DNA from: Glycera tridactyla
Lineage: Eukaryota
Assembly (NCBI GenBank): GCA_965644265.1
Contig: OZ286475.1
Coordinates: 14,756,001 to 14,820,000, forward strand
Length of the DNA stretch: 64,000 bases
Direction: 5' to 3'
Numbering within the stretch: position 1 is the stretch's first letter; the number at the start of each line of letters is the position of its first letter. The translations under genes were made by a program, and so were the position numbers. Under the pieces are notes generated by a model that was not told the DNA's origin, did not search any database, and worked only from the letters and a program-made list of their open reading frames with translations. Positions 7,400 through 53,439 of this stretch are shown here, one piece after another.

Positions 7400-9702
7400 G
7401 ATCCTGCAGGGCAATGTAGTCTTGATTAACTGTCGAACCACCAGTCATGTACCAGCGGGTAACAAGTTCAACTATGATAAGGGCGACTTCTACGGTCTTC
7501 AGGAGGATTTGGACATAGGATGGGAGAATGAACTTGACAAGATAGAAGACATCAACTGCAAGTGGAACTTCTTTGTGACAAAATACCTTGAGGCTGTCGA
7601 CACCCACATACCAAAAAGAAAACCTCGTAGAAGGAAGCCACATGAAAAAGGACCGCTGGACAAAAAAATCCGCAACAAGATCAACAGAAAGGACAAACTA
7701 AGGAAAAGGCACCTAGGAACCAGAGATGAGGATACAGACAGAGAGTACAAGAGAGCTAGCAACCAAGTGCGCCGACTGACAAGAAATGCGGAAAAGCTAC
7801 GGGAAAGGGATATCGCCAACAACATCAAGAGCAACCCAAAAAAATTCTGGGGATATGTCCGTTCCAAGCAGAAGACACGCACAGGAGTCCCAGACCTGAT
7901 CAATGACCAAACGGGACAGGTGACCAAGGGAGGCGAAGAAAAAGCGGAAGTGCTGGCGGCCTATTTCTCATCCGTCTTCACGAGAGAGTCAGATGATGCA
8001 TTTGATGAACCAGCAAGTAGGTGTGAGGTATTACTAAATGACTGTGACATAACACAGGAGACTGTGGAGAAAAAACTCAAACAGCTGAACATCTCGAAGG
8101 CACCCGGCCCCGACGGCACCCACCCACGGATACTACGTGAAGTCAGGCACATTCTATGCAGACCGTTAGCCCATATCTTCAATGAGTCACTGCAGAAAGG
8201 GGAGCTACCGGAAGACTGGAAAAGAGCCCATATATCCGCAATATTTAAGAAAGGCAACAAGCAACAAGCGGGCAACTACAGACCAGTGAGCCTTACGAGT
8301 ATTGTGGTCAAGGTGCTGGAAACCATCATCAGAGAAGCGATCATGGAGCATATGCGAGCCAACAATCTATTTAGCAACAAGCAGTATGGTTTCATCCAAG
8401 GGAGGTCTACTGTACTACAACTTCTGACAGTCCTGGACAAGTGGACCGAGACGCTAGATAGAGGAGGGGAGATTGATGTTGTGTACTGCGACTTCCAGAA
8501 AGCGTTCGACAAAGTACCACACAGAAGGCTAGCAGCAAGGGTACAAAGTTATGGAATCTGTGGCAACGTCCTGAGATGGATTGAGAACTTTCTCTATGGA
8601 AGACAACAACGTGTTCACATCCAGGAGCACTTCTCCAATTGGCACAGTGTATTGAGCGGAATTCCACAAGGCTCGGTGCTCGGACCATTACTTTTTGTGC
8701 TCTTCATCAACGAGCTACCCTCCGTCTCCATCAACAGTGATATATACCTCTTCGCTGACGATCTCAAAGCTTTCACACCGGTGTACTCACCTCAGGATCG
8801 GACTAACCTACAAGGTGACCTGGACCGTATTTATGCATGGACTGAGCCAGCACTCCTCAAATTCCACCCCGACAAATGTAAGGCGATGACAATTGGAGCT
8901 GTGGTACAACCAGAACTGACATACACCCTTGGGGGCAACCCACTAACAACCGTTGATCGAGAAAAGGACATCGGGGTGACAATCGACACCAGCCTGACCT
9001 TTGAACGACATACATCTGAGAAGATCAGCAAGGCCAACCGTATATTAGGACTCATCTCAAGGACCTTCACCTACAAAGACAAACATGTACTGGTCACTCT
9101 ATACAAAGCCCTTGTACGACCGCACCTAGAGTATGCTAACCAGGTATGGGCACCTAATACGGTCAAGCAAATAACAGCACTCGAGAATGTGCAACGTCGA
9201 GCAACTCGGATGGTACCAGGTCTAAAGGAGAAGAGCTACGAAGAACGGCTCAGGAACTTAGGACTGCCCAGCCTGGCATACAGAAGGCTACGAGGGGATA
9301 TGATAGAGACTTACAAAATAGCAACAGGGAAATACGACCCAGAGGTTACCAGGGACCTCCTCAAGTTCAACCAAAACGCCACGAGAGGACACCCTTTCAA
9401 AATCTTCAAGGAGAGAGCCAGATTGAACCTGAGGAAAAACTCGTTTTTCTACCGGATAGTGGATCCATGGAACAGTCTGATGGAGGATGTTGTCAGTGCC
9501 CCCACGATTAAGTCATTTGAGAGTAGACTGGATAACTTTTGGAAGGAGCACCCACTGAAATTCAATTACAGGGCATCACCCGCGCATGCACCCCAACACC
9601 TAGGTACCATCGTTCAGTCTAAGGAGCTGGCATTAGAGGCTGTTGAAGCCTAGTTCGGGCCAGAAGAGGACCTGTAAGTAAACCTGTAAGTAAACCTGTA
9701 AG
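7400..9702 (+). mobile_element. 5'-truncated CR1-clade LINE
   Basis: RT ORF without an endonuclease domain. The 3' end is a tandem repeat (ACCTGTAAGTAA)x~3 at 9670-9702. The 5' junction is approximate. Confidence 0.9.
7422..9653 (+). CDS. LINE ORF2 reverse transcriptase (C-terminal 743 codons, uninterrupted)
   Basis: Motifs KAPGPDG, YRPVSLTS, QYGF, DFQKAFDKVPH, GIPQGSVLGPLLF, LFADD, RPHLEY, VQRRATR, RRLRGDMIETYK, TRGH, WNSL, typical of CR1/L2 ORF2. Confidence 0.95.
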   Translation: MINCRTTSHVPAGNKFNYDKGDFYGLQEDLDIGWENELDKIEDINCKWNFFVTKYLEAVDTHIPKRKPRRRKPHEKGPLDKKIRNKINRKDKLRKRHLGTRDEDTDREYKRASNQVRRLTRNAEKLRERDIANNIKSNPKKFWGYVRSKQKTRTGVPDLINDQTGQVTKGGEEKAEVLAAYFSSVFTRESDDAFDEPASRCEVLLNDCDITQETVEKKLKQLNISKAPGPDGTHPRILREVRHILCRPLAHIFNESLQKGELPEDWKRAHISAIFKKGNKQQAGNYRPVSLTSIVVKVLETIIREAIMEHMRANNLFSNKQYGFIQGRSTVLQLLTVLDKWTETLDRGGEIDVVYCDFQKAFDKVPHRRLAARVQSYGICGNVLRWIENFLYGRQQRVHIQEHFSNWHSVLSGIPQGSVLGPLLFVLFINELPSVSINSDIYLFADDLKAFTPVYSPQDRTNLQGDLDRIYAWTEPALLKFHPDKCKAMTIGAVVQPELTYTLGGNPLTTVDREKDIGVTIDTSLTFERHTSEKISKANRILGLISRTFTYKDKHVLVTLYKALVRPHLEYANQVWAPNTVKQITALENVQRRATRMVPGLKEKSYEERLRNLGLPSLAYRRLRGDMIETYKIATGKYDPEVTRDLLKFNQNATRGHPFKIFKERARLNLRKNSFFYRIVDPWNSLMEDVVSAPTIKSFESRLDNFWKEHPLKFNYRASPAHAPQHLGTIVQSKELALEAVEA

Positions 9703-10214
9703 ATTGATTGATTGATTCATGTATCAGAACAGAAGATTCTGTATATCGCGAGTTCCTGGTCAAAGAAAGCTAGAGCTTATCTCCCCTTCATATATCACTC
9801 TCACAAACCCTGAACCCAAGATGATGGGAAACCTGAAAGGTTGAAAAAAGTACCAACTTGGAGGATTATGCGTGCTACATGTCCCAAGTCTCAAAAACCT
9901 AGACATTGTCCCCTGCAGGTATTACATTCACCAAACCCGAACACAAGATAGATATAGGTGGCTAGGTGGATGTAGCTGACAGTTCAGACACACCTCTAAT
10001 TATCCAACATGAACATGGTGAACCTTAGTGTTGTTACTCGTGATGATTGTCAGCTACTTTAATGCGTTGCATTTAATTTCGTTCACCATTCTATGTTGAT
10101 ACAGCAGGAGAAACAAGAAAAATATAGATAATTTTTCCATTTTATATGGCTCATAAGGGTGGAATGGTCAAGTCAAACCATTATCATATACTCTGCATGG
10201 TGCGTGTTAACCAG

Positions 10215-10560
10215 CCCAGATAGCAATCTGACGTCGGGCCGACGTCAATAGACATAGGCAACGTCGACGGTCATTCCGCGGACGTCGGCAGTATGACGTC
10301 GGTCTCTCGACGTCGGTTTGACGTCGTTTTGACGACTGATGAATACATTTTATATCTGTCTGATATACGACGTCTGGCCGACGTCATACCCAGTAAACAT
10401 TTTACTACTGGGCCTCAACTGACGTCAGATCAACAGCGTGTTGCCAACCAATAATTTTACAAGTAATTGGTCAGATTTCGACGTTGGCCCAACATTGATC
10501 CAACGTTGGCAATTCGACGTCAGAATGCCAACGCCGTAAGGACGTCTGCCTGCCGACGGA
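10215..10560. repeat. Left TIR plus subterminal GACGTC repeat array
   Basis: At least ten GACGTC hexamers plus near matches within ~340 bp. Confidence 0.9.
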
Positions 10561-12261: not shown

Positions 12262-13705
12262 CATCTGGGCAGGGATCGAACCCATGTCATCCAGGTTATT
12301 TTCCAAAAGTGACAGTCTTACCCATTGAGCTACCAGTCCATAACACATTCCTTATCCATGAATCTACAGCTGCCTTACCACACAAAATATATATTACATT
12401 AGGTCAAGGTAACAAAATGGCCTCAACCACACAAGAGATTAGAACCAGCATCCCTTGGTATTTTGCTGGGCCGAACAACAGTGATGATGGCCTTAAAAAA
12501 GTGTGTCAGTGGTCAATTGGACATGTGAGTGCCTGATTCTACCTACATTTCAACTGGTTGTTTACTTCCTGGAAAAAATAAATTTGACCTGAGCAGGGTT
12601 CGAACCCATGACTTCCAGGTCATTCTCCAAAAGTGACAGTCTTACCCATTGAGCTACCAGTCCAAAACACATTCCTTATCCATGAATCTACAGCTGCCTT
12701 ATCACACAAAATATATATTACATTAGGTCAAGGTAACAAAATGGCCTCAACCACACAAGAGATTAGAACCAGCATCCCTTGGTATTTTGCTGGGCCGAAC
12801 AACAGTGATGATGGCCTTAAAAAAGTGTGTCAGTGGTCAATTGGACATGTGAGTGCCTGATTCTACCTACATTTCAACTGGTTGTTTACTTTCTGGAAAA
12901 AAATACATTTAACCTGAGCAGGGTTCGAACCCATGACTTGCAGGTCATTCTCCAAAAGTGACTGTCTTACCCATTGAGCTACCAGTCCAAAGGGTACTAA
13001 GCAACTGCAAATCTGAACCTGCTTGACCACACATGATACATTATCCATCAGTTAAGGTAACAAAATTGCCTCAACCACACAAGAGATTGAAAACAGCATT
13101 CTTCGGTATTTTGCTGGGTCAACAACAGTGATGATTGCCTTAAAAAAGTGTGTCAATGGTCAATTGGGCATGTGAGTGCCTGATTCTACCTACATTTCAA
13201 CTGGTTGTTGAATTTTTTGGAAAAAAAATGCATCAGACCTGAGCAGGGTTCGAACCCATGACTTCCAGGTCATTCTCCAAAAGTGACAGTCTTACCCATT
13301 GAGCTACCAGTCCAAAACACATTCCTTATCCATGAATCTACAGCTGCCTTACCACACAAAATATATATTACATTAGGTCAAGGTAACAAAATGGCCTCAA
13401 CCACACAAGAGATTAGAACCAGCATCCCTTGGTATTTTGCTGGGCCGAACAACAGTGATGATGGCCTTAAAAAAGTGTGTCAGTGGTCAATTGGACATGT
13501 AAGTGCCTGGTTCTACCTACATTTCAACTGGTTGTTTACTTCCTGGAAAAAATACATTTGACCTGAGCAGGGTTTGAACCCATGACTTCCAGGTCATTCT
13601 CCAAAAGTGACAGTCTTACCCATTGAGCTACCAGTCCAAAGCACATTTCTTGCCCATGAATCTACAGCTGCCTTAACACACAAAATACATATTCCATTAG
13701 GTCAA
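12262..13705 (-). repeat. ~325-bp tandem array (5 units), each with a 78-nt tRNA-like Pol III unit
   Basis: tRNA-like segments at 12262-12339, 12586-12663, 12911-12988, 13236-13313 and 13560-13637 (periods 324, 325, 325, 324). A box TAGCTCAATGG, B box GGTTCGAACCC or variant, and a T6-T8 run 7 nt downstream in units 2-5. Confidence 0.85.
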
Positions 13706-14280
13706 GTCTTCTCAGACCTTTCCCCGAATTTTACTATGCATTATCTTTCAGGAAAAGTACTCTTCGTCGCTATGGGTTTCCAGAAAACCAATAGCAACTG
13801 AGTACACTACCTATTCTGATATTAAGTGGTCCCATACTTTTATGAAATGGAACCATGGACATAAATATAAGTACATGTAGTATTGAAAAATAGTGATAGC
13901 TGGGAGCCAGTTGATTAATAAATTCATTGAGTTTGTAGCCATAGTAACTTATGTCACGAGATTAAAGCACTGGATGAAGATGAGATGTCATCTTTGACTG
14001 AGCCATCAAGCATACCTAGTAAGATTGAAAAGTGAAAATCTTGCACTGCGATTTCTCAGTCCCAAGTTTCACCAAAGATCTGCCTATGATAATTCAAAGC
14101 AAGCAGATGAACTGCAGAGGATGCCTCCCAATTGTATGGAATTACAGAGATGCCAACCATTACGATTTTGGCCTAATGATTACGATTTTCACCCCAATAT
14201 TACGCCATTACGATCTTGTAGTCAATTATTACGCTTTTTGGAGGTGACTGGTACTGCACGCTGCTACAGTCCATTCCATA

Positions 14281-14455
14281 CAGTGAAATCTGCGATGAGA
14301 GACCACCTCAATTATCAATTAAAAGTGGTCTCTCAAAAAAGGTGGTCTTTGGTCTAAGGTATATTTGACTATGTCAAACAAGAGCTGCCCTAAAAACGTG
14401 GTCTACCGCAGGAGGCAGTCTCTCAACAGCAGGTCTTTCATTGCAGGTTTCACTG
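14281..14455. mobile_element. Tc1/pogo-type MITE (TA TSD) nested in the giant element
   Basis: TA|CAGTGAAATCTGC...GCAGGTTTCACTG|TA. Confidence 0.8.
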
Positions 14456-15177
14456 TATCTGAAATCAGGTTGATGAGGACTGAGAGTTCAATGGTTGCCA
14501 GTCATGATGTTGGATCAACGGACGAACTGCACAATGCATCCATGCCATTAAATCTCAAATCGGGCGACATAGACACTGATAGACATGATATTTGATATTC
14601 TGAACCCAAATGATGAGAGAGGTTAGCATGGCTTAGCTGGCAAAGTGTTGGCCGTGCAATCCATAGATCCCCGGTTCAAAGCTGCAAATGCCGCAAAAAA
14701 TAATTCATTTGGAATCAATTTAATTTTTTATGTAATTTATCATTCTACCACCTAAAATGTTGCAAAAAGTGAATCAGAATGTGAAACAATGTCATTAGTA
14801 AAAGAAGAGGAACTTTGAATATTTTGACAGTAATTTCGACAGTATCACACACTTCACTTATTAATGATGACTAAATCGTCATTTGATGAGGATAAAATGA
14901 AACAACTTTTTACCTGTGACCATTCTGAACAGTTTCAACGTGAAAAGTTATGAGTTCATTAGCAGATTCGAACCGGCGACCTGTGGTTTACCTGACCAGC
15001 ATCTAACCAACATGGCCATGTAGGTTACATATTCCATGTTCATGAACATGGTCTGAATAATATTGTCACCCTACACCGGACCATGTGCGTGCATGTAAAG
15101 GTGCGATCACCTAACACCCGGACGGTCGTTCGCTCATCACGACGAGCAGCGCCCTCTGAGTGCGATATGTATTCCAA

Positions 15178-15960
15178 AAGTGACAGGCTAACAATGTGTC
15201 AATGGTCAATTGGACATGTGAGTGTCTGATTCTACCTACATTTCAACTGGTTGTTGAATTTCTGAAAAAAAAATACATCAGACCTTAGCAGGGTTTGAAC
15301 CCATGACTTCCAGGTCATTCTCCAAAAATAACAGGCTAACCCATTGAACTACCAGTCCAAATCATATTCCGTGTCTCCAAATCTGAACTTGCTTCACCAA
15401 ACATGATACATGATCCATTAGTCAAGGTAACAAAATGGTCTCAACAATGGTCTCAACCACACAAGAGTTTGGAACCAACACCCCCCGCATATCGCTGGGT
15501 CAACAACAGTGATGATGGCCTTGAAAATGTGTGTCAATGGTGAATTGGACATGTGAGTGTCTGATTCTACCTACATTTCAATCGGTTGTTGAATTTCTGG
15601 AGAAAAATAATACATCAGACCTGAGCAGGGTTCGAACCCATGACTTTCAGGTCAGTCTCCAAAAGGGACAGGCTAACCCATTGAGCTACCATTCCAAAGC
15701 ATATACTGGGTCTCCAAATCTGAACCTGCTTCACCAAACAAGATACATGATCCATTAGTCAAGGTAACAAAATGGTCTCAACCAAACAAGAGATTGGAAC
15801 CAGCATCCCCCGGCATATTGCTGGGTCAACAACAGTGCTGATGGCCTTCAAAATGTGTGTAAATGGTCAATTGGACACTTGAGTGACAGGCTAACCCATT
15901 GAGCTAGCAGTCCAAAGCCTATTCTATGTCTCCAAATCTGAACTTGCTGGGTCAACAACA
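15178..15960 (-). repeat. More diverged continuation of the ~325-bp tRNA-like array
   Basis: Full 78-nt units at 15281-15358 (T9 run) and 15618-15695 (T5 run), and a truncated unit at ~15885-15912. Confidence 0.8.
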
Positions 15961-16073
15961 GTGTTGATGGCCTTAATTATGTGTTTCAATGGTCAAATGT
16001 GAGTGTCTGATTCTACCTACATTCCAATGCTCAATCCGCTAGGCCTCACATGCTAATTGTCTTTTATTTCTAG

Positions 16074-16540
16074 GACTGTTCATCTGACCATTGACACGAC
16101 TCAGTGGCCAGTCTGGCCTAGTTCGTTGGATGCTGGACGCTGAACTCTCAGGCTCCCAGTTCCACTCTGCCGAAAGCAGTGAGTGAATTTTTGTCGTTTT
16201 TTGGGTAGATAAACTGTTCGGAATTGCATTTTTTAACAAGATATCAAAGCATTATTGATAACTCACTCATACAAATACATATATTGATTAATAACAAGGA
16301 TGTGATACTTGCATTAATTATGAATTAACTTTGTTTTGCACCAGCATTACTTGATCACTAGCAATCTTAGTGTTAGATGGCTAGTGCGTAACCCACTGGG
16401 CAATGCATGCTAATAGATTTTTATTTCTAGGACTGTTTATCTGACCATTAACGGACAACGAGTCAGTGGCCAGTGTGGCCTCCTAGGTTGGATGCTGGAC
16501 GCTCACCCCTCAGATTCACAGTGCCACTCTTCCGAAAGCA
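16074..16540 (+). other. Two tandemly duplicated putative non-coding exons (16074-16178 and 16431-16540)
   Basis: Both have acceptor ttttatttctag|GACTGT and donor GAAAGCA|GTGAGT. Lengths are 105 and 110 nt, and copy 1 has stops in all three frames. Confidence 0.5.
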
Positions 16541-16796
16541 GTGAGTAAATATTCGTCATTTCTTTGTCATCAGCTTGCACGGATTTCATGTGTATTCAAC
16601 AAAAACAGTTTGAGTTCAAGTTGTCTGCCCAAACTTCCTCCCAAATGTCTGTAATTCATCATTATACTGTCTAACATAATGCAAAAATGTGTGTCACTAG
16701 AAAGAAAATGCCTAAATTGAAGAAATGGTGTTTGTAAGAGAATTGCCATTTCAACTATAAAATTATGATTTGATGGGGATAACGTGAGATGTTGTG

Positions 16797-17824: not shown

Positions 17825-19861
17825 ATGGCAGGAATTGATGAGATAGGAAAAATATACTGCAGAAGAACTTTGAAGAGGCATGCAAACAAACGAGTTGAGT
17901 GCCTCCTGTCCAGAGGTGAGGACGATAACGTTGCAGGTACCTCTGAGACTTCACCAAAAGTTCTTGAACTGCCTGAAGAAGATCACACAGAGATTGTAAA
18001 TCACATGTCAGAATTGCATTGTGAGGATGAGTATGGCGCTCAAGTGCAAGCTGAACTTATTTCTCTAGATCTTGACGCCACTTCAAATTCTTAGTCGGAC
18101 TGTGATGTGCTCAGTGATTCGGATTGTGATGACAAGGCAGAAGATACGATATATAAGGACCTGAAAGAGTGGGCTGCTGACAATGACATTCGGCATTCCC
18201 ATCTGAATTCCCTCCTAAGAATTCTGAAACCGTTCTTTCCCTCTTTGCCACTAGATGCACGTACATTACTGGGAACACCAACAACCTACCAGGTCCAACA
18301 GATTGGTGGTGGAGCGTACCATCACTTTGGTGTAGCTAATAACGTTATTCATAGGGTGGAGGCATTACGAAAAATACATGAGACTGATACTCTGACATTA
18401 CAGGTCAATGTGGATGGCTTACCACTGTTCAAAAGTACCAATGAACAATTTTGGCCAATACTTGGTTGTCTACTTGAAGACCCCTCCAAACAACCATTTA
18501 TCATTGGCCTATTTCTTGGCACAAAGAAACAGATTGATGCGAATGAATACCTTCGTCAGTTTGTCGATGAGATGATGCTGTTAGAAGAACAGGGGATTGA
18601 TATAAATGAAAAACATTACATTCTCAAAATTGGCAATTTTGTTTGTGATGCACCAGCCCGTGCTTTCATTAAGCGAATCAAAGGTCACACTGGATATCAT
18701 GGATGTGAGAAATGCACGCAAAGTGGTGAGTGGGTTAACAACCGAATGACATTCCCAGATATGAATGCTCCCAAAAGAACCAATATCGCCTTCGATGACA
18801 TGGACATTGAAGAGCATCACCATGGCCCTTCCTCTCTCTCACAGCTAGGAGTTGGCTTAGTAACTGGTTTCCCTCTAGATTATATGCACTTAGTTTGCTT
18901 GGGTGTTATGAGAAAGTTGCTAAATCTCTAGCTCAAAGGACCTCTATGTGTTTGTTTAGGTAGCCGACTTGTTGGATTGATTTCAGATCAGCTGAATCTT
19001 TTCAAAAGTTACCTTCCACATGATTTTTCACGGAGAGGGAGGTCTCTATTGGAGTTGGACCGATGGAAAGCAACCGAGCTGAGAACATTCCTACTTTACT
19101 CAGGACCAGTGGCTTTGAAAGGAAATGTTTCTGATGCTGTTTATGGCAATTTCCTGATGCTCCATGTTGCAATAAGTATACTAGTGCAGGGCGAGTTTTG
19201 TGAACTCTACCTCGACTACGCTCGGCAACTTCTGACTCTATTTGTCCAAAATTTTGCAGATATCTATGGTCATGATATGCTCGTTTATAATGTGCACACT
19301 TTAATTCACTTACCTGATGATGTCTTGCGTTTTGGACCATTACAAAATTTCTCCTGCTTCCACTTCGAAACATATTTGCACATGATAAAGAAGTTGATAA
19401 GGAAACCAAGGTACCCTATGCAACAAGTCATCAGGCGAGTTGATGAAAAGAAGTTTCTTGAAGCCAAATTGAGAGAGAAAGAAACAATGCTGAAAAAAAA
19501 ACATCATGCAGGTCCTTTGCCGAATAACTTCCCACACTGCATCCAGTATAGTGAGGTGAACCTAGAGAGTTACATGTTGTCAATCTCACAACCAGACAAT
19601 GCAGTACTAAGTAATGGAGAGGTATACCTCATACGCAATATTGTCATGCTTGGTGACTTAGTTCAACTTGTGTGCAGCCAGTTTCAATTCAAGGAATCTT
19701 TCTATCAATACCCATTGGATTCTTCAAATCTGAGAACTTACTTTGTCAGACACCTAGATCGCCACCTATGTACTATCAACATTGGCGATGTCACTGGCAA
19801 GATGGTTCTTCTTCCTCTGAGAGATGGATTAGTTTCAATTCCATTAAATCACACATTGTGA
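17825..19861 (+). pseudogene. CMC/EnSpm-type transposase, single 679-codon frame broken by two in-frame TAG stops
   Basis: ORFs 17825-18094, 18107-18931 and 18977-19861 share one frame, with stops at 18092-94 and 18929-31 (LLNL*LKGP, probably TGG>TAG). Motifs VNVDGLPLFKS, QFWPILG, CDAPARAFIK, GHTGYHGCEKC, PLDYMHLVCLG, RWKATELRTFLLY, YNVHTLIHL. Confidence 0.9.
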
Positions 19862-20492: not shown

Positions 20493-21519
20493 ACTCACCA
20501 CTTATCTGCTGCATCAAATACTTCTCTGCTAGGTATCAGAAGTACATTGGCAAAACACATGCAATACAGTATGCCACAAGTGCCTTGTGCTTGTCAACCA
20601 AGAGTAAAACAATGAAAATCATAATTTAATTCTTGCGAGCATTACCACTGTGTTTGATATGTTGCAGATACTTTGTAATTCCGTATGTCTTTGTGATGAC
20701 CCTATTGAAAATAGCGGCCAACAGCAACACCAAATGCAAGGCGACCTCTTGCGGATCTCCAACTCATTAAAACAGTCAGAGAACAAACAGAGTGTTGCGG
20801 CCAGCAGACGCAGTACCAACTCAATAAATTTTCCGGTGTTGAAACCCACAACTCCTTCAGCCTGCTATCTGATCTCCCTACTCAAGTGCAGAAAGTGGAC
20901 CTAAAACCTCGACATTTCTTTTTTTTCCCACCGAATAAGCATGGCGAGTCTAAATCACATATCGAAAATCACCAGAGATCAAACCTTTCGTGCTGCCACG
21001 ACAGTAAGTACGGCTGCATTGTCACCTGTATATTGTGAATACCTTTACTGTCAATATGTCATTTCAAGCGCAGATCTATTGGCTGTGCAATAATATACCC
21101 ACCGGATTGTCCATATATTCATAGATAGCATTTGCACTATTATGATTAAAAACTCAACCTTGTGATGTATCGCCTGACAACCTCACCATACCGTGACAGA
21201 CCTATCCCGATGATTTTTTGTTTGTAATGCGCACCTACCAGATTAGTCACAAATCAATAGTTAACATGACGACCACTGATATCCAAATTCACTCCGTCAC
21301 TAACTGTATACTCATGTTAACCAACATAGACCGTTGAGCTCACATATTCCACCGCACATAGTGCCACATCTTGCACAAGTATATGTTGCCTGTCTCTATC
21401 CTGCATACGTCCAAATACATTTGTTGCAGAATGTTGGTGTGTGCACAAAGGACGATGCTAAGGGACGCCTTGTTGATTGTCCAATTGCCAGACGCGGTGT
21501 ACAACTTGGAAAGGTTGGC

Positions 21520-22374
21520 ATGCCATATGTCATGTATATTGGTGACAGTTATGTCCGGCGCCTAGGTGATTTTGCCACCAACAAATCAACTGGCTCGAAA
21601 TACAAGTACATTTTGTCAAAGTTCTACTTCATGGGGATTGGAGGGTCCAAGTTCACAAATTTATTGCGGTCAATTCATGGTGATATGTCAGCAGACAAAC
21701 TTGCCATCTATGGAAATAGTTGGGACACATTTGTGGAATCAAAGTTCCGTCCATCGTTCGTCGTCATCACCTGTGGATCCAATGATGTCTCATCGTATAA
21801 TGAAAACATCAAGCCCCTGAAACGACGTCATCAGCACCCAGGTCATATACAAAATGTACTTCATGCAAAACGAAATAATTTCATGGAACACACAATCCCG
21901 TATATTGATGGGCTCATTATGTTTCTGCAGGAGAAATTTCCTAACATTGAGGTATTTTTCACCCCGATCTTCATTAGACCAGATTGGTACCCAGAGTCTA
22001 TCATTCTTGCCAAACGGCTGGATAAGTATGTTTTGAACACCATCAAACAAATCAGCACTTATAACATTCACTGTCTGACTATCAGACGAATCATGAAGAT
22101 TATACCCAAGCCCGCAAAACATAATCGATCGGTGTCCAAGTACTGCTCTGGTCATATTCATCCCGGTGCGCTCCACTATGACAGAGTGCACCTCAGCTAT
22201 GTGGGAAACTGTCTATTCTGTTATGACTTATGCGGCTCTCTACTTGATAAGTGGGTGGATCTCTTTGGTGAAAAGAGAAATGAGATGAGGCAAGGAAAAA
22301 ATAAGAAAAAGAGGAGAGTATACACACGTAAGACCAAAGAGCAGAAAGCAGCAGAGCACTTGTCCAGAACCTAA
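21520..22374 (+). CDS. Intronless SGNH/GDSL-family hydrolase (284 aa from ATG 21520; frame open from 21334)
   Basis: All four blocks present: YIGDSY (catalytic Ser), GIGG, CGSND, DRVH (Asp-x-x-His). Basic C-terminal tail RQGKNKKKRR. No stops or frameshifts. Confidence 0.85.
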   Translation: MPYVMYIGDSYVRRLGDFATNKSTGSKYKYILSKFYFMGIGGSKFTNLLRSIHGDMSADKLAIYGNSWDTFVESKFRPSFVVITCGSNDVSSYNENIKPLKRRHQHPGHIQNVLHAKRNNFMEHTIPYIDGLIMFLQEKFPNIEVFFTPIFIRPDWYPESIILAKRLDKYVLNTIKQISTYNIHCLTIRRIMKIIPKPAKHNRSVSKYCSGHIHPGALHYDRVHLSYVGNCLFCYDLCGSLLDKWVDLFGEKRNEMRQGKNKKKRRVYTRKTKEQKAAEHLSRT

Positions 22375-35964: not shown

Positions 35965-36177
35965 GCGTCGGATTGACGTCGGATTGACGTCGGATCGACG
36001 TCAGACTGACGTCGGTGCAACGTCAGCCTGACGTCAGGCCGACGTCAAGGGCCGACGTCGTCACGACGTCGGGCCGATGGACAAAATGACGTCGACCCGA
36101 CGTCGGAGGTCGACGTAGGGCCGACGTCAGAGACGACGTCGGGCCGACGTCGGGCCAACGTCAGTTTGCTATCTGGG
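35965..36177. repeat. Right subterminal GACGTC array plus TIR
   Basis: Consecutive 11-nt units such as GGATTGACGTC, GGATCGACGTC, AGACTGACGTC, AGCCTGACGTC, AGGCCGACGTC, ending ...TTTGCTATCTGGG. Confidence 0.9.
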
Positions 36178-36895: not shown

Positions 36896-37659
36896 CCCAG
36901 ATAACATAAGAGCATTGGGCCAATGCTGGCTAACATTGGCTTGGTGCTGGCAGTGCTGGCAGCGGATACCCAACATTGGGCCAATGCTGGCCCAATATTG
37001 GTATTAGGATTCGAAATTGTGCTTGCATCTGCCGACGTGAAGTGATGGCTGCCCATAACTTAACCATTATGTGTTGTACGCATGCGCGCACGTCACGTCG
37101 TTCAACTCGTGCAGACGACGTGCGAGTGTTGACAGTTGAGTCTCAAAACAAACAAACTCAATAAACTACCATCGATTACAGCTGATTTAGCATGATTTGC
37201 CTGCCAGGATACGATTTGGACATACTAATACACACTTACAGGACTCTATTGGTATTCTTCAATGGAGATATCAGATACTAGCGTGATTTTGGCGAATAGA
37301 TCGGCGGTTCCGACGATGTAAACAAAGGCCGCCATCTTGGATTTTTGACAAGTGCCACACTTTTCATGCCGACTTTCGGCGATCATATCTCGGAAAGTCC
37401 TGGACGTATATGGCTCATATTTGGTCAGAAGGTGCATCCTCATTGTATTGATTGCTACTGCGAATTGGCGATGTGGCGAGCGTCTGAACAGTGTTGGCTG
37501 AACTTTGGGTCAGTGCTGGCTTATGCTGGGTCAATGCTGGGTCGCCAGCATTGGGCCATTGCCGAGCCGATTTGCACTGCCGACGTAATGCCAATATTGG
37601 ACTAATGATGGCAGCCAGCATTGGTCCAGCATTGGCCCAATGCTGGTATGTTATCTGGG
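36896..37659. mobile_element. 764-bp non-autonomous EnSpm-type element (MITE)
   Basis: TIR CCCAGATAACATA(AG/CC)AGCATTGGGCCAATGCTGG, with a 2-bp TC TSD at 36894-95 and 37660-61 and subterminal CCAATGCTGG/CCAGCATTGG repeats. Its right 547 bp are duplicated at 43283-43829. Confidence 0.9.
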
Positions 37660-38268
37660 TCCCACCTGGTGGATTGACTGTGAACTATCGAACACGTGGA
37701 GCGCCATCTTTGTCTAGGGCCAGTGACTATGACTTGGCACATTGATCTCGAAATGTTGCTGGATCATTTAGAAATCAAATCAAGATGACCAGACATTTCA
37801 TAAGTGGATCTCTCTGAGTAGGGGACGAGCCACATGATTGATTGATTGCTGGATTGATTGCTTGCTTGATTGATTGTGGTTCAGCAGCCCTAATATGCCA
37901 GAAATGGAGTGCTTGGTACCCCAAGCCACATGAGTCGGTTATTTCACTGGACTTCAATTCTGCACGATATCTCAATACCATTTCTCGCGACCTTACTTGC
38001 CATAGAAAATGAACAATTTTGGTCATTGATCATGTTTATTTTCAACGAACTGTACATTCATACTTAACAGCCACATTCTGGTTCAGTTATCATTTCGAAC
38101 AGAAACAGTAAGAGATCAAATAAAAGAAACAGTAGGATTAGTGTAAATTTGGTTCAATTCCATACTAAAACAAAGAAGGCCGATGACGAGCATGTTAACT
38201 AGATGCTCCTTGGCAAAATGGACTAATTCCCCCGAAAGACCTGCGTATGCCTATAAATCATTGAATAC

Positions 38269-38325
<57 letters not shown>

Positions 38326-38406
38326 CGTGTGTGTTTGGTGTACGTGCGCCTGTTTGTGTGTGTGTTTAGTGTGTGTGTGGGGGGGGGGTATGTGTTTAGT
38401 GAGTGA

Positions 38407-38459
<53 letters not shown>

Positions 38460-38545
38460 GTGTACGTGCGCCTGTTTGTGTGTGTGCTTAGTGTGTGTGT
38501 GGGGGTATGTGTTTAGTGAGTGAGTGAGTGTGTGTGTGTGTGTGC

Positions 38546-38593
<48 letters not shown>

Positions 38594-39962
38594 TTGGTTT
38601 GGTCAAAGATGGATAGCATAGATACAATAGCGAATGCTAGAATCATAATACTGAAAAGAGGGTTTATGCTATACAGACAGAGGTTTCACAGTGTAAGCTA
38701 CCTCAACGCGCGTTATTACTTTCAACTGAACGAAAAACTCCCCAACTTATCAATCATACCATTTGCTTTTCAATCGACATTGCCCAATTATCAGAGATAG
38801 CAGGTAGAAAATAATGCTATTACATTGCTGGTCAACCAACAATGCACATCTATAAGAAAAATTACTCGAATGTATGTGCAATGTTACTGGGTGAGGACTA
38901 TTGAAGAAAAACTTCGATGCAAAACAAGTATAGACGTTATATTCTTTACCAAAAGACGAATAGACTGACAGACCACTCGTATCTTTACAACTTGTGTTCC
39001 ACGACAATGTATCATCAAAGATAATCATACATTTCACAAGTAGCCTTTTCGGAGGCGATAGCATAATCCCTATTTGGTAATCAACACTTTTGTTGTGCCC
39101 ATTGTCACCCATTTCACTACACTAGAAGTGTATCAAAGCCCAAATTCCCCTCACTAGAGGAAATGGTAGCAAACGTATTCATAGATCCAGTACGATTACT
39201 GTAAGTGGTATGATTTCATACTCGAACAAATACATCAGCTGGATACAATATGCCAAGATAAAATTATTTCTCCCGAAGCCCCACTAATTAGTTTTGGAAG
39301 CAGCTTTTTTCCATGGACATAGGGGGCCACAAATGGGTCATCCACCCATGTCACTACACTTAAAGTATGCTAAAACCAATATCCCTTCACTAGAGGACAG
39401 GGTAGAAACAACATTTATATTCAAGAAATAAATTCAACACCATCTCGTGGACTTGCAAATAACATAAAAGACAGAACCTTCTGCCATCATTTGTAAATCC
39501 GTTATCACTAACAAACAGTTCATACAGTCAACAAACGTTTCCTGGTTCAGCCATTATCTGAACAGAAAAAGTAAGAGATCAAATGGAAATAAAATTTGGA
39601 TTACTGTAAAAATGGTTCACTTTCATACTAAAACAAAGTGGGCCAATGGCAAACACATTAGCTCGATGCTACATGCCAAAAAAACAAAGCTGATATTTGT
39701 GTCAAAGGGGTTTTGTCTGCTTTGTTTTATTGTTCCTGTTAAGAACGATTGAAGGCTGTGAATGGTTATCCATATGTATCACGGATGGAAATTAAGAAAA
39801 AAAGAAGAAAATATGACCGATCAGCCAGCTGTTCCATAGTCTATAGTCTGTTATAGCCGAATATGACGGGTATGTTTTCGAAAGTCATATCTTTAAATTC
39901 GGTCACGAATTCATATGGATACGACTATAGATTGAATACGAGTTCCGGCGACCATCGAACCG

Positions 39963-40209
39963 TAAATTAGGCCTGGCCTTCCTGGGTGTGGGTTGATATT
40001 CATCCTGCGACATTACCATCTCGCTAGCGTTAGCATAGACTATGAAGCCGGTAGCCGAGTGTGTATTCCATCAGATTTCGTATAGTGTCCTGCATGAAGC
40101 CGAACACAGAGCTGACATATGGGTCAGAATCGGGTAAGTATGTTAGCACTAGCGATATAGGAATGTCGCAGGATATACATCAACCCACGGGGGGGGTTAG
40201 GCTTAATTC
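39963..40209. mobile_element. MITE-like inverted repeat (duplicated at ~46124-46372)
   Basis: GTGGGTTGAT..ATCCTGCGACATT..ATCTCGCTAG..TTAGCATA is inverted ~200 bp downstream. Confidence 0.65.
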
Positions 40210-40806
40210 ACTATCCTACAACACTACTCATCGCTAATCAACCATAGACCTTTCAGGGCAGTTGTCCTGTCCGAGAAATTTCATGCGATCTAGAAATTTA
40301 CCATTTTCTGAGATCCATTTCAATGAATCTTTTGAGGGCACTAATTCAGTATTCGACCCTTTGTTAAGTATGGTGGACCCAGCGGACAGTTTCCATGTGT
40401 GTGCACCGTGGGGCCTAGGGGGTGTGCACCGTGGGGCCTAGGGAGCCATGTGTCCACTCGCACGTATGCATGTGGGCGTCGTGGTGCCCTTGGGGCCCGG
40501 GCACAATGTGTCCTTAAGGCGGCCTGAATTGACTCATATCATATGTATTGTTCCGAATAAAGTCATACAAATTCCCCCGTGAAAGAAACACTATCTTGGT
40601 TTGAATCACATCCAGCGAGAGCTTCATGTGTTAAGTAATTATGAAAAGGTCAAAAATCAACGCGGGATTTTCGGAGGTGAAAACGTACCCGACAATTTGT
40701 CTGACAGTCAAGTAACTTTGTGTAGATTGACTGGCCGCCTCTTGACAAGTATGAGGTAAGCACGTCTCCATATCTATCTAGTAAGAGCACTGCTATTTAG
40801 CATGAT

Positions 40807-43272
40807 CTAGGATGGCTGGTAACCATCAAATGTTTGTGTGATCCAATCGTATAGGGAGGAGACCCTGGTGTAAACACCGGGATACCCCGGATCGGCGCAG
40901 CCGTAACCCCAGCTGGTTTTACCTGTCAGATAGAAAGTGTTGCCATGCGCACACACCAGAGGTCCCCCGCTGTCTCCTTGACACGTATCGACCTGTCCGT
41001 GCATATAGCCCGCGCACAACATGCCATCCGTGATGAGGGAACCGTACGCTGCAACGCATGTAGAATTGGTAATCAGGGGCACCACAGCTTCTTGAAGGAT
41101 CCACATATCGCCCGTACCCTCTGTTGCACCCCATCCGGTAATCACACACGTTTGACCAGCATGATCTGATTGGGTCAAACATACTGGACTGATTAAATCA
41201 GTGAACGTGATTTCCTCCGCAAGATAGATTAAAGCTATATCTGACTGCAGTGTATGATCATTATAATCTTCATGAACTATTATGTCTGATACAGAAACAT
41301 GAACCTCGGAACCCTCTGTGACATGCTGGTTGTGATCCCCTAGAATCACGGTTACCGCGGAGCTGTGTGTGTTGTAGACACAGTGTGCGGCGGTCACCAC
41401 CCACCTGCTTGCAACCAGGCTCCCACCACAAAAGTGATGATTTTCAAAGAGACTGACCTGCCATGGCCAGCTGTGCGGTATTGCATCAGCACCTCCCACC
41501 ACGCGGCCAATATTTGGTGCAATCGCGGGTACCCCGCAATCCACAGGAGTTTGGTCTGGTACCCGCGGTATGTTGATGGACGTGAAGCTAATACTGAATC
41601 CGGTGCGAGTGGAAAGGCTATCTGTATAGAAAATCAAGAAAACATTGTCTGAATGTATAACTGCACTGGCTGGAAATTCATCTCCACAAAATGTCCCAAT
41701 CAACTCCGGAGGATAGATATAAATTATCAACCCATCATGCGGACATGGCGGAGGTCCTTGAACATCAAATTCAAGGAAATTCAACTGAATTGCATAGTCT
41801 GGTGTCCCCTCAATTTCCCATGTACAGTACATGTCATTTGTATAGTGATCTTCTGTTAATTCAATGTTGCCACTTGGACCAGTGAGTAATTGGGGCTGAT
41901 TTGCCCCACATGCCAAGGGAGTCTGGTCCATCAGGAAGGATGTGTAACTGACACTGAACCCAGTATAAGTGGAAAAGCTATCTGTGTAGAAAATCAACTG
42001 AACATTGTCTGCATCTATATCTGGAATGATTGGAAGTTCTTGTCCGCAAAATATCCCAATTACCACCGCATGATGAGCATATATTATCAGCCCATCATGC
42101 GGACATGATGGAGAAGGTCCTTGAACATCAAATTCATGGAAGTTCAAGTGAATAGCGTAGTGTGGTGTCCCCTCAATTACCCATGTACAGAACATGGAAT
42201 TTGCATAGTTGTCTTCCGTTAATTCAACGGTGCCACTAGGACCAGAGAGTGATTGGGGCTGATTCGGGCCACACGCAGAATTGCCTGTGATGTATTCGTA
42301 AGAGAGGCTGAAACCCCTGCCTGTGACAGACCCATCTGAATAGAAGGTGATTTGGACGACATGGTATGGTATATGCACGGTCTCCCATACGTAATCGTCG
42401 CTGCAGAGCACATTATACACCGAAGGCGCTTCAAACACCAGACCATCGTGTTCACACGTTGGGTGTTCCTGAATGTCTATTTCAAATATTGTTATCTCTA
42501 TATCACTGCTCTCTGGTGCCTGAACCTGCCAAGTCTGCTGAACGTTGTTGTCGTAATTACCTTGGAATATTGTAGGATATTGAATTATACCATATTGTTC
42601 TGTCAGTACCACTTCTTCGCCATCATGTGGCACTTTTGTGATCAGATAGGCACCCGCGAACCCTGCTGTCGATGCTTCATGCCCTGTGCGAAGTTGAATG
42701 GTCAGTCTCTGCTCGCTGCTTTGAACAACGAATGGAATCGCGATACCAGTGGAACACTTAACAAGGCGATGTCCTCCAACACCTTCACGGAATGTCAATC
42801 TCTGGCCAGGCTGACATGGCACTTCGTAATCCAAGATCATAACCGCCGGAACATACCCTTGGGGGGCCCTTATTTTGTACTTGCACAAACTATGGCTGGA
42901 ATCATGCTCTGGGTGGAGCCAACTCTCTGACAAAATGAACCCCGGACTGTCCACAGTAATCCAACCTGTGTTACACTCGGATATAGAAGGGAGAAAGTCC
43001 AGGGTTCTTTGATTCTCTCTGGTAACTGTCATGTTGGTATCGCTCAACTTTGATATGATTCTGGGGAAGGTGTCAGAACCACTTATATGGTCTTCGCGAA
43101 CTCTGGTGGAGCTGAGGCCCTTTGGCATGACCTGCAGAAGGGCAGCGTGGATGGCCGGGTCTGCCCTTTGCTCTGCTCGTGAGAGGTACTCTTTTGCTGG
43201 TGTGGATTGTGATGAAGTCGCTGGTGCTTGGTGTAGAGGTGATGGACTGATTGGCGGCAGTCCGACCGCCAT
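40807..43272 (-). CDS. Intronless CUB x4 + trypsin-family (S1A) serine protease, copy 1 (821 aa, lacks the first 12 codons of the signal peptide)
   Basis: One divergent and three clear CUB domains, CGVP linker, activation site R|VVGG, triad TAAHC / SDIAL / GDSGGP, and the S1 Asp in DTCQGDS. Reads GKTSWG where copy 2 reads GITSWG. Confidence 0.9.
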   Translation of the reverse strand: MAVGLPPISPSPLHQAPATSSQSTPAKEYLSRAEQRADPAIHAALLQVMPKGLSSTRVREDHISGSDTFPRIISKLSDTNMTVTRENQRTLDFLPSISECNTGWITVDSPGFILSESWLHPEHDSSHSLCKYKIRAPQGYVPAVMILDYEVPCQPGQRLTFREGVGGHRLVKCSTGIAIPFVVQSSEQRLTIQLRTGHEASTAGFAGAYLITKVPHDGEEVVLTEQYGIIQYPTIFQGNYDNNVQQTWQVQAPESSDIEITIFEIDIQEHPTCEHDGLVFEAPSVYNVLCSDDYVWETVHIPYHVVQITFYSDGSVTGRGFSLSYEYITGNSACGPNQPQSLSGPSGTVELTEDNYANSMFCTWVIEGTPHYAIHLNFHEFDVQGPSPSCPHDGLIIYAHHAVVIGIFCGQELPIIPDIDADNVQLIFYTDSFSTYTGFSVSYTSFLMDQTPLACGANQPQLLTGPSGNIELTEDHYTNDMYCTWEIEGTPDYAIQLNFLEFDVQGPPPCPHDGLIIYIYPPELIGTFCGDEFPASAVIHSDNVFLIFYTDSLSTRTGFSISFTSINIPRVPDQTPVDCGVPAIAPNIGRVVGGADAIPHSWPWQVSLFENHHFCGGSLVASRWVVTAAHCVYNTHSSAVTVILGDHNQHVTEGSEVHVSVSDIIVHEDYNDHTLQSDIALIYLAEEITFTDLISPVCLTQSDHAGQTCVITGWGATEGTGDMWILQEAVVPLITNSTCVAAYGSLITDGMLCAGYMHGQVDTCQGDSGGPLVCAHGNTFYLTGKTSWGYGCADPGYPGVYTRVSSLYDWITQTFDGYQPS

Positions 43273-44434
43273 AATGCAGAGGAGACGACGTGCGAGTGTT
43301 GACAGTTGAGTCTCAAAACAAACAAACTCAATAAACTACCATCGATTACAGCTGATTTAGCATGATTTGCCTGCCAGGATACGATTTGGACATACTAATA
43401 CACACTTACAGGACTCTATTGGTATTCTTCAATGGAGATATCAGATACTAGCGTGATTTTGGCGAATAGATCGGCGGTTCCGACGATGTAAACAAAGGCC
43501 GCCATCTTGGATTTTTGACAAGTGCCACACTTTTCATGCCGACTTTCGGCGATCATATCTCGGAAAGTCCTGGACGTATATGGCTCATATTTGGTCAGAA
43601 GGTGCATCCTCATTGTATTGATTGCTACTGCGAATTGGCGATGTGGCGAGCGTCTGAACAGTGTTGGCTGAACTTTGGGTCAGTGCTGGCTTATGCTGGG
43701 TCAATGCTGGGTCGCCAGCATTGGGCCATTGCCGAGCCGATTTGCACTGCCGACGTAATGCCAATATTGGACTAATGATGGCAGCCAGCATTGGTCCAGC
43801 ATTGGCCCAATGCTGGTATGTTATCTGGGTCCCACCTGGTGGATTGACTGTGAACTATCGAACACGTGGAGCGCCATCTTTGTCTAGGGCCAGTGACTAT
43901 GACTTGGCACATTGATCTCGAAATGTTGCTGGATCATTTAGAAATCAAATCAAGATGACCAGACATTTCATAAGTGGATCTCTCTGAGTAGGGGACGAGC
44001 CACATGATTGATTGATTGCTGGATTGATTGCTTGCTTGATTGATTGTGGTTCAGCAGCCCTAATATGCCAGAAATGGAGTGCTTGGTACCCCGACATGAG
44101 TCGGTTATTTCACTGGACTTCAATTCTGCACGATATCTCAATACCATTTCTCGCGACCTTACTTGCCATAGAAAATGAACAACTTTGGTCATTGATCATG
44201 TTTATTTTCAACGAACTGTACATTCATACTTAACAGCCACATTCTGGTTCAGTTATCATTTCGAACAGAAACAGTAAGAGATCAAATAAAAGAAACAGTA
44301 GGATTAGTGTAAATTTGGTTCAATTCCATACTAAAACAAAGAAGGCCGATGACGAGCATGTTAACTAGATGCTCCTTGGCAAAATGTACTAATTCCCCCG
44401 AAAGACCTGCGTATGCCTATAAATCATTGAATAC

Positions 44435-44478
<44 letters not shown>

Positions 44479-44577
44479 GTGTGTGTGTGTGTGTGCGTGT
44501 GTGTTTGGTGTACGTGCGCCTGTTTGTGTGTGTGTTTAGTGTGTGTGTGGGGGGGGGGGTATGTGTTTAGTGAGTGA

Positions 44578-44620
<43 letters not shown>

Positions 44621-44708
44621 GTGTACGTGCGCCTGTTTGTGTGTGTGCTTAGTGTGTGTGTGGGGGTATGTGTTTAGTGAGTGAGTGAGTGTGTGTGTGT
44701 GTGTGCGC

Positions 44709-44752
<44 letters not shown>

Positions 44753-53379: not shown

Positions 53380-53439
53380 ATTATTGGTTGACAACTATCC
53401 TCTGAGTGAATGATGCAGTATACCTAGTCATATGTACAA

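What the first reader, a model, noticed from the sequence alone, without database searches (positions are those of the whole stretch)
12262..15912. Tandem array of apparently complete Pol III transcription units making a 78-nt tRNA-like RNA
Seen: seven 78-nt copies (consensus GGACTGGTAGCTCAATGGGTAAGACTGTCACTTTTGGAGAATGACCTGGAAGTCATGGGTTCGAACCCTGCTCAGGTC) at a ~325-bp period. Each has an A box and B box, a 6/7-paired acceptor-like stem in the consensus, and in six copies a T5-T9 run within ~12 nt downstream. D and anticodon arms pair poorly, the variable region is ~10 nt, and the central TGAC can pair with either flanking GTCA. Established: A box + B box + oligo-T defines a type 2 Pol III gene. 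Inference: a transposon-borne small ncRNA cassette or a TFIIIC-binding chromatin barrier, oriented antisense to the transposase.
Basis: partly seen in the sequence, partly recalled or inferred. Interest (0 to 1): 0.8.

Follow-up and report, generated by a model that had tools for sequence, protein, structure and literature searches.

The report
Tandem repeat carrying a decayed tRNA
A short, partly broken tandem repeat of about 324 bases whose every unit carries a worn-down tRNA copy that still has the signals for RNA polymerase III; arrays like this are already known from amphibians, so it is a modest curiosity and not a new kind of gene.

Summary
Seven 78-nt tRNA-like copies lie on the minus strand at 12262-15695, with two fragments, in a head-to-tail array with a 324-337 bp period. 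All seven keep an A box and a B box. Six have a T5-T9 run starting 8-11 nt downstream. They are not tRNA genes: Rfam tRNA scores 17.5 bits against a cut-off of 29, the cloverleaf has three positions that never pair, no change between copies is compensatory, and the fold is no more stable than shuffled sequence. The array is decaying. It is split into two diverged blocks (12262-13706 and 15174-16040) by 1.47 kb of unrelated DNA, and three units are truncated by deletions. The tRNA-like part is more conserved (91-100%) than the spacer (73-83%), but the comparisons are few and not independent. The "transposon-borne" reading is not supported. The upstream ORF is a LINE reverse transcriptase that ends 2.6 kb away, the broken transposase-like ORFs lie 1.8 kb beyond the other end, and no terminal inverted repeats enclose the array. 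The best reading is a tRNA-derived tandem repeat of the PolIII/TAN or Xenopus satellite I kind, probably transcribable, with no sign of a selected RNA. Whether it is a genome-wide satellite could not be tested, because the source genome is not in any searchable collection.

The parts
12262..13706 (-). Array block A: five tRNA-like copies, four full spacers and one partial spacer. Units are 96-98% alike except one with a B-type spacer (12989-13235).
   Evidence: TRF period 324, 4.4 copies; repeat families D1-D3; alignment A1; blastn of the unit
12262..12339 (-). tRNA-like copy c1, the 3'-terminal unit of the array. It has 8 differences from the consensus and no downstream T-run; unique flank follows.
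   Evidence: (93.3 bits with model R1)
12586..12663 (-). tRNA-like copy c2, identical to the consensus. T6 at 12573-12578.
   Evidence: ARAGORN Pro-TGG; Rfam tRNA 17.5 bits
12911..12988 (-). tRNA-like copy c3, 3 differences. T7 at 12897-12903.
13236..13313 (-). tRNA-like copy c4, identical to the consensus but followed by a B-type spacer. T8 at 13221-13228.
13560..13637 (-). tRNA-like copy c5, 1 difference (B-box G to A). T6 at 13547-13552.
13707..15173 (.). 1.47 kb of non-array DNA that splits the array. It holds two heads of an unrelated dispersed SINE family (about 14625 on the + strand, about 15018 on the - strand) and a 27-nt inverted repeat. The repeat phases on its two sides do not match, so it is not a clean insertion.
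15174..16040 (-). Array block B: diverged units (about 80-85% identical to block A), rearranged. It has two full tRNA-like copies, two fragments and internal deletions.
15174..15194 (-). Fragment of the tRNA-like part (about positions 22-39), joined to mid-spacer by a deletion.
   Evidence: sequence and alignment
15281..15358 (-). tRNA-like copy c7, 7 differences, internal T5. T9 at 15265-15273.
   Evidence: (96.2 bits)
15618..15695 (-). tRNA-like copy c8, 6 differences. T5 at 15603-15607.
   Evidence: (93.8 bits)
15882..15913 (-). 5' 32 nt of a tRNA-like copy, fused to mid-spacer by a deletion. It has the A box only, with no B box and no T-run.
   Evidence: unit 1-32, 90.6%; 28.8 bits over 15843-15913

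Best explanation
This is a short satellite-like tandem repeat whose 324-bp monomer was built around a tRNA gene or tRNA pseudogene together with its natural oligo-T terminator. The segment was amplified head to tail by unequal crossing-over or replication slippage (inferred). It was then partly homogenised, as four units are 96-98% alike. It is now decaying through point changes, internal deletions and a 1.47-kb interruption. Because each monomer still has an intact A box, B box and downstream T-run, the units probably can recruit TFIIIC and Pol III and give RNAs of roughly 85-95 nt (inferred, not shown). Nothing in the sequence indicates that the RNA itself is under selection. In kind it matches the tRNA-related, Pol III-type tandem families known from amphibians: Cynops PolIII/TAN, Xenopus OAX/satellite I, Rana/polIII and Hydromantes Hy/polIII.
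For: The head-to-tail array and its period are shown. A and B boxes are intact in 7 of 7 copies, and a T5-T9 run starts 8-11 nt downstream in 6 of 7. The score is at pseudo-tRNA level: no Rfam gathering hit in the window, tRNA 17.5 bits against 29, and ARAGORN of 7 copies. In the cloverleaf 75% of cells pair, there are 0 compensatory changes, three pairs never form, and shuffled partners do as well. Stems vary at 13 of 42 columns and loops at 7 of 36. The minimum-energy fold is not a cloverleaf, and z-scores run from +0.85 to -0.95 for the four copies folded alone. Decay is visible as truncated units, deletion junctions and a split array. There is no CCA after the acceptor stem and the T-run sits at the usual tRNA-gene distance, which fits a genomic tRNA-gene origin better than a retroposed mature tRNA (the link to origin is inference). 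Precedents for tandem tRNA-like Pol III families are listed in PMC10702118 and PMC9659126.
Against: Between diverged units the tRNA-like part is more conserved than the spacer: 91-100% against 73-83%, one-sided Fisher p from 5e-7 to 0.06 for pairs of diverged units. By region, identity is 0.91-0.97 in the tRNA part, 0.73 in the T-run region, and 0.43-0.71 in the 50 nt upstream of the next copy. That pattern could mean constraint on the Pol III module. However, there are only two or three independent lineages. Recombination within the most similar segment would give the same picture, for example unit c4, which pairs an A-type tRNA part with a B-type spacer. Parts of the spacer also reach 0.86-0.93. 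Box columns vary less than the rest, but not significantly (3 of 23 against 17 of 55, p = 0.08). Genomic copy number, transcription and the parent tRNA are all unknown.
Confidence: 0.6

Rival explanations
1. A tandem cluster of functional Pol III genes for a lineage-specific tRNA-derived small RNA of about 90 nt, kept by selection.
For: Boxes are intact in all 7 copies and terminators in 6. The tRNA-like part is more conserved than the spacer and than its immediate flanks, which is the pattern real tRNA genes show.
Against: There is no compensatory change in 21 pairs, and substitutions mostly break pairs. Stems vary more than loops. Folding energy is no better than shuffles. An internal T4 or T5 in every copy could end Pol III transcripts early. 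Three units are truncated and the array is interrupted. No further copy exists in 64 kb.
Confidence: 0.12
2. The array acts as DNA, not as RNA. Seven B boxes at a spacing of about 324 bp bind TFIIIC and work as a chromatin boundary or genome-organising site, like tDNA insulators and ETC/COC sites.
For: The B box is perfect or varies only at degenerate positions in all 7 copies. The array sits in a repeat-rich stretch between mobile-element remnants. tDNA and B-box clusters are known barriers in yeasts and mammals (own knowledge, not checked here).
Against: Nothing in the sequence distinguishes this from passive retention of boxes in a young repeat. Box columns are not significantly less variable than the rest (p = 0.08). 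No obvious gene pair needing insulation was found at the array's edges.
Confidence: 0.08
3. The array is cargo or an internal repeat of a mobile element: a DNA transposon of the family whose broken ORFs lie at 17825-19861, a Helitron/Helentron-type non-autonomous element, or a multimerised SINE.
For: Transposase-like ORFs lie 1.8 kb from one end. Tandem repeats inside En/Spm-like elements, MITEs and Helentrons, and satellites derived from SINEs, are documented.
Against: No terminal inverted repeats bracket the array and ORFs. The LINE ends 2.6 kb away at its own tail. A related transposase locus from another genome, with 10 kb on each side, has no tRNA-like array. There are no dispersed copies in the window. 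The T-run directly after the head is incompatible with read-through into a SINE body, and the unit ends carry no SINE tail. Helitron ends were not searched for systematically.
Confidence: 0.15
4. These are genuine tRNA-Pro(UGG) genes in a tandem cluster.
For: ARAGORN calls two copies tRNA-Pro, anticodon TGG. Tandem tRNA gene arrays exist in some eukaryotes (own knowledge).
Against: Rfam tRNA scores 17.5 bits against a gathering score of 29, E = 7, with no gathering-level hit. There are mismatches in all four stems, a 10-nt variable region, and 3 pairs that never form.
Confidence: 0.02

Closest known systems
PolIII/TAN tandem family of the newt Cynops pyrrhogaster (about 360-nt unit with a tRNA-like sequence, transcribed in vitro), as summarised in PMC10702118
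   Same: Head-to-tail monomers of about 320-360 bp, each with one tRNA-related segment carrying Pol III promoter boxes. No matching dispersed SINE is known.
   Different: The host here is a different, unidentified metazoan. No sequence comparison with the newt family was possible. Copy number and transcription are unknown, and only about 10 units were seen, several of them broken.
Xenopus laevis OAX / satellite I (tRNA-derived central segment, tandem repeats)
   Same: A tandemly repeated unit with a tRNA-derived Pol III-type segment.
   Different: The OAX unit is much longer and highly abundant. The unit here is 324 bp and its abundance is unknown.
Rana/polIII (about 250 nt) and Hydromantes Hy/polIII (about 200 nt) tandem families
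   Same: A tRNA-related region inside a satellite-like monomer.
   Different: Hy/polIII lacks a B box according to PMC10702118, whereas every unit here has a perfect B box. Those families make up large genome fractions.
SINE-derived satellites of squamates (sSat; PMC10702118)
   Same: Short arrays of partly homogenised units derived from Pol III-related repeats. Array ends carry partial units.
   Different: sSats are demonstrably derived from known dispersed SINEs. No dispersed relative of this unit is present in the window, and the unit has a terminator right after the head.
Tandem arrays of true tRNA genes
   Same: Repeated unit containing A box, B box and oligo-T in the tRNA-gene arrangement.
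   Different: The copies here fail tRNA models and do not keep the cloverleaf.

Membership tests
Canonical tRNA gene (Rfam RF00005) | Covariance-model score at or above the gathering score (29 bits) | tested here: not met
   17.5 bits, E = 7, for the two best copies. No gathering-level hit anywhere in the window.
Canonical tRNA gene (Rfam RF00005) | Four-stem cloverleaf kept across copies, with compensatory changes | tested here: not met
   75% of cells pair, 3 of 21 pairs never form, and there are 0 changes on both sides. The minimum-energy fold is not a cloverleaf.
Type 2 Pol III transcription unit | Internal A box (TRGCNNANNGG-like) near position 8-19 | tested here: met
   TAGCTCAATGGG in 6 copies and TAGTTCAATGGG in one.
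Type 2 Pol III transcription unit | Internal B box (GGTTCGANNCC) 30-60 nt after the A box | tested here: met
   GGTTCGAACC, GGTTCAAACC or GGTTCGATCC at positions 58-67 in all 7 copies, about 38 nt after the A box.
Type 2 Pol III transcription unit | Oligo-T terminator shortly downstream | tested here: met
   T5-T9 starting at +8 or +11 in 6 of 7 copies, and none after the terminal copy. Every copy also has an internal T4 or T5.
Type 2 Pol III transcription unit | Actual transcription by Pol III, or TFIIIC occupancy | not testable with these tools
   No expression or ChIP data are available.
tRNA-related Pol III tandem families (PolIII/TAN, OAX, Rana/polIII) | Head-to-tail tandem monomers, each with a tRNA-related segment | tested here: met
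tRNA-related Pol III tandem families (PolIII/TAN, OAX, Rana/polIII) | High genomic copy number or long arrays (satellite behaviour) | not testable with these tools
   The source genome is not in the searchable collections. Pattern scans gave only an unrelated plant-like contig or nothing. The repeat-derived ORF has no relatives.
tRNA-related Pol III tandem families (PolIII/TAN, OAX, Rana/polIII) | Sequence homology to the described amphibian families | not tested
   No reference sequences of those families were at hand. The resemblance is in architecture only.
tRNA-derived SINE | Head followed by a body and a LINE-related or simple-repeat tail, transcribed as one unit | tested here: not met
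   A T5-T9 run lies 8-11 nt after the head, and the unit boundaries have no A-rich or simple-repeat tail.
tRNA-derived SINE | Dispersed copies | tested here: inconclusive
   None outside the array within 64 kb by blastn or by the covariance model. A different SINE family has at least 13 copies in the same window. A genome-wide test was not possible.
Transposon-borne repeat cassette | Array enclosed, together with the transposase, by the element's terminal repeats | tested here: not met
   No inverted repeats link 9.7-12.3 kb with 19.8-31 kb apart from copies of the dispersed SINE, and none were found within 9.7-19 kb.

The most novel reading that the evidence does not exclude
The 78-nt module is the gene of a lineage-specific, tRNA-derived Pol III small RNA, or a TFIIIC landing pad, that selection maintains in tandem in an invertebrate. 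This would explain why it is clearly better conserved than its spacer and its immediate flanks.
Probability: 0.1. Interest if true: 0.55.

Novelty: new member of a known kind. Interest (0 to 1): 0.25.

Why it matters
If the unit proves abundant in the source genome, it would extend the tRNA-related Pol III tandem-repeat class beyond the few amphibian cases listed in PMC10702118, which that review itself judged inconclusive. It would also give a clean example of a satellite born from a tRNA gene together with its terminator, not from a SINE. If it is a single local array, it is an ordinary piece of decaying repeat DNA. For annotation, it shows that such units trip ARAGORN (2 of 7 copies called tRNA-Pro) and should be flagged as pseudo-tRNA repeats.

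Tried and rejected
- **True tRNA-Pro genes:** rejected on Rfam score and stem mismatches.
- **LINE cargo:** the RVT_1 ORF at 7422-9653 ends in its own 12-mer tail repeat at 9670-9702, 2.6 kb from the array.
- **DNA-transposon cargo:** no terminal inverted repeats were found. Solved-structure searches of the two ORFs gave nothing. The representative search showed a large family of about 680-aa proteins with weak DUF4218. A related locus with 10-kb flanks has no array.
- **Relation to the abundant dispersed SINE of this window:** none by blastn or by the covariance model.
- **Finding other genomic copies:** the repeat-derived ORF has no protein relatives. A 20-nt core pattern hit one plant-like metagenome contig whose stretch around the match looks like a SINE fragment; that is a shared tRNA-type motif, not a relative. 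The 30-nt pattern hit nothing in genome contigs or viral contigs.
- **Identifying the organism:** the CUB-trypsin ORF is at best 34% identical to a lamprey protein. The RT is at best 68% identical to an unnamed metagenome contig and 48% to Pinctada. Exact-protein look-ups found nothing. The window is metazoan but otherwise unassigned.
- **Bacterial promoter and terminator scan:** irrelevant to a eukaryotic Pol III unit.
Full report
**What is there**

On the minus strand between 12262 and 16040 lies a head-to-tail repeat.
- TRF gives a 324-bp period, 4.4 copies and 89% matches for 12265-13706.
- The repeat finder gives seven in-register copies with spacings of 324, 325, 325, 324, 1721 and 337.
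- Three more copies differ at 6-8 positions.
- blastn of one unit against the window finds nothing outside 12265-16027.
- A covariance model built from the seven copies was run with filters off. It finds only those seven (93-108 bits) and one fragment (28.8 bits) in 64 kb.

**Anatomy of the unit (minus strand)**

Each unit is a 78-nt tRNA-like part followed by about 246 nt of spacer.
- The A box is TAGCTCAATGGG in six copies and TAGTTC... in one.
- The B box is GGGTTCGAACC, with G to A in two copies and A to T in one, all at degenerate positions.
- Six copies are followed by T6, T7, T8, T6 or T9 at +8, or T5 at +11. The copy at the array's end (12262-12339) runs into unique DNA and has no T-run.
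- Every copy also has T4 (T5 in one) inside the anticodon loop.
- A separate dispersed SINE family in this window keeps a T4 about 28 nt after the start of its B box, in 7 of the 11 heads that the box scan picked up. From this I infer that T4 may be a weak terminator in this organism.
- No CCA follows the acceptor stem.

**It is not a tRNA gene**

- No Rfam family reaches its gathering score anywhere in the window.
- With relaxed thresholds the tRNA model gives 17.5 bits against a cut-off of 29, E = 7, for two copies.
- ARAGORN calls two copies tRNA-Pro(TGG).
- I counted the cloverleaf taken from the Rfam alignment on the seven copies. 75% of cells pair, three pairs never form (3:76, 11:25, 55:71), no pair changes on both sides, and shuffling the partners does as well.
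- Variable columns are more frequent in stems (13 of 42) than elsewhere (7 of 36).
- Minimum-energy folds are not cloverleaves. Their z-scores against shuffles are +0.59, +0.85, -0.76 and -0.95.

**State of the array**

There are two blocks.
- Block A (12262-13706) has units 96-98% alike, except one whose spacer is of the other type.
- Block B (15174-16040) is about 80-85% identical to A. It is rearranged: one unit keeps only the first 32 nt of the tRNA-like part, another ends in a stray fragment of positions 22-39, and the last is spacer only.
- Between the blocks lie 1467 bp of unrelated DNA that include two heads of the dispersed SINE. The repeat phases on the two sides do not match.

This is what a neutrally evolving young satellite looks like.

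**The one observation that points the other way**

- Between diverged units the tRNA-like part is 91-100% identical while the spacer is 73-83%.
- By region, identity is 0.91-0.97 across the tRNA-like part, 0.73 in the T-run region, 0.84-0.93 in the spacer core, and 0.43-0.71 in the 50 nt upstream of the next copy.
- This resembles a gene with free flanks. However, there are only two or three independent lineages.
- Unit c4 combines a consensus A-type tRNA part with a B-type spacer, as expected from crossing-over inside the most similar segment.
- Box columns are not significantly less variable than the rest (3 of 23 against 17 of 55, p = 0.08).
- I treat it as weak evidence for constraint on the Pol III module, not on the RNA fold.

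**Surroundings**

- The ORF at 7422-9653 (+) is a reverse transcriptase: RVT_1, E = 2e-30, with thousands of LINE relatives that mostly also carry endonuclease domains missing here.
- That ORF is followed at 9670-9702 by a 12-mer tail repeat. The LINE therefore ends 2.6 kb before the array.
- The interval holds three copies of the dispersed SINE.
- Beyond the other end, ORFs at 17825-18094, 18107-18931 and 18977-19861 (+) are pieces of one broken gene.
- The middle piece has 11,095 relatives at 50% clustering, typically about 680 aa. These carry only weak DUF4218 matches. One long relative (1,353 aa) also matches DDE_Tnp_1_7 and, weakly, Plavaka. I therefore take the family to be transposase-like.
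- No inverted repeats join the two flanks.
- A related locus with 10-kb flanks from an NCBI genome has no tandem tRNA-like element.

The transposon-borne reading is therefore not supported.

**Elsewhere**

- The repeat-derived ORF has no relatives in the protein collection.
- A 20-nt core pattern hit one metagenome contig that reads like plant DNA; the stretch around the match looks like a fragment of a tRNA-derived SINE. The covariance model scores it at 10.7 bits, so it shares a tRNA-type motif and is not a relative.
- Scans of the bacterial/archaeal and viral collections found nothing.
- The organism could not be named. CUB-trypsin ORFs make it a metazoan. The best protein matches are 34% to lamprey for CUB-trypsin, and 68% to an unnamed metagenome contig and 48% to Pinctada for the RT.

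**Comparison with what is known**

- PMC10702118 lists four tandem families with a tRNA-related Pol III-type segment. They are Cynops PolIII/TAN (about 360 nt, transcribed in vitro, no matching SINE), Xenopus OAX/satellite I, Rana/polIII (about 250 nt) and Hydromantes Hy/polIII (about 200 nt, no B box).
- PMC9659126 tabulates the last and Xenopus satellite 1 as SINE-like, tRNA-related satellites.
- The array here has the same architecture, with a monomer length close to the newt family.
- Membership by sequence was not tested, and abundance and transcription cannot be tested here.
- It works like those families. I file it as a new member of that kind, not as a new kind.

**Verdict**

The Pol III-type anatomy is real. 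The transposon link and any RNA function are unsupported. Interest is low to moderate (0.25). It would rise if a genome-wide search showed independent conservation of the 78-nt core.

No N stretch was filled, no contig was taken for human, and no step needed referral.

Noticed in passing
window 10699, 10946, 11545(-), 14625, 15018(-), 30430, 30725, 31266(-), 31606, 31983, 32594(-), 32658, 33488, 35702(-): A dispersed SINE family of about 150 nt has at least 13 copies at 68-86% identity. It has a tRNA-like head (GTGGCCTAGTTGGTTAG...GGTTCAAATC) and a body (AACTTTTCACTCAGAAACATCTTGATTT). It is unrelated to the array unit. Nine of the blastn matches sit within 30.4-35.7 kb, in both orientations.
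   Followed up: partly
window 7422-9702: A LINE remnant: a 743-aa RVT_1 ORF lacking the endonuclease domain that most relatives carry, followed by a tail repeat of (ACCTGTAAGTAA) x 2.8. The best relative is 68% identical, from an unnamed metagenome contig.
   Followed up: partly
window 17825-19861 (+): A broken transposase-like gene in three ORF pieces. It belongs to a very large family (11,095 representatives, about 680 aa) whose only Pfam signal is a weak DUF4218 match.
   Followed up: partly
window 37113-49218: A tandem duplication of about 6.16 kb, 99-100% identical over most of its length. Each copy carries an uninterrupted CUB-repeat plus trypsin ORF (40807-43272 and 46971-48797, minus strand) and long (TG)n tracts. 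Identity this high could reflect a very recent duplication or an assembly artefact.
   Followed up: no
window 57890-58662: A 26-bp minisatellite, 29.7 copies at 99% identity. The unit contains the near-palindrome GAGACTTGGAGAGGTCTC.
   Followed up: no
window 16028-16564: Directly beside the array there are two copies of a different unit of about 360 bp (79-82% alike). To the eye each contains a degenerate tRNA-like segment on the plus strand (GGCCTAGTTCGTTGGATGCTGG...); no search matched it to the dispersed SINE.
   Followed up: no
window 10200-10560 and 35966-36153: Stretches dense in the palindromic motif GACGTC/CGACGTCG. The second stretch forms 11-, 22-, 33- and 47-bp tandem repeats.
   Followed up: no
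window 21334-22374 (+): A 346-aa ORF with a sub-threshold GDSL-lipase match (28.9 bits against a cut-off of 32.9).
   Followed up: no
window 51312-57554: Six masked N runs lie among (GTGG)n and (CGT)n low-complexity repeats. They were left untouched.
   Followed up: no
L001 1700-1800: A plant-like metagenome contig carries a stretch that looks like a tRNA-derived SINE fragment and shares the 20-nt core GACCTGGAAGTCATGGGTTC with the array unit. This looks like the same tRNA-type variable-loop and T-arm motif arising in unrelated lineages.
   Followed up: partly
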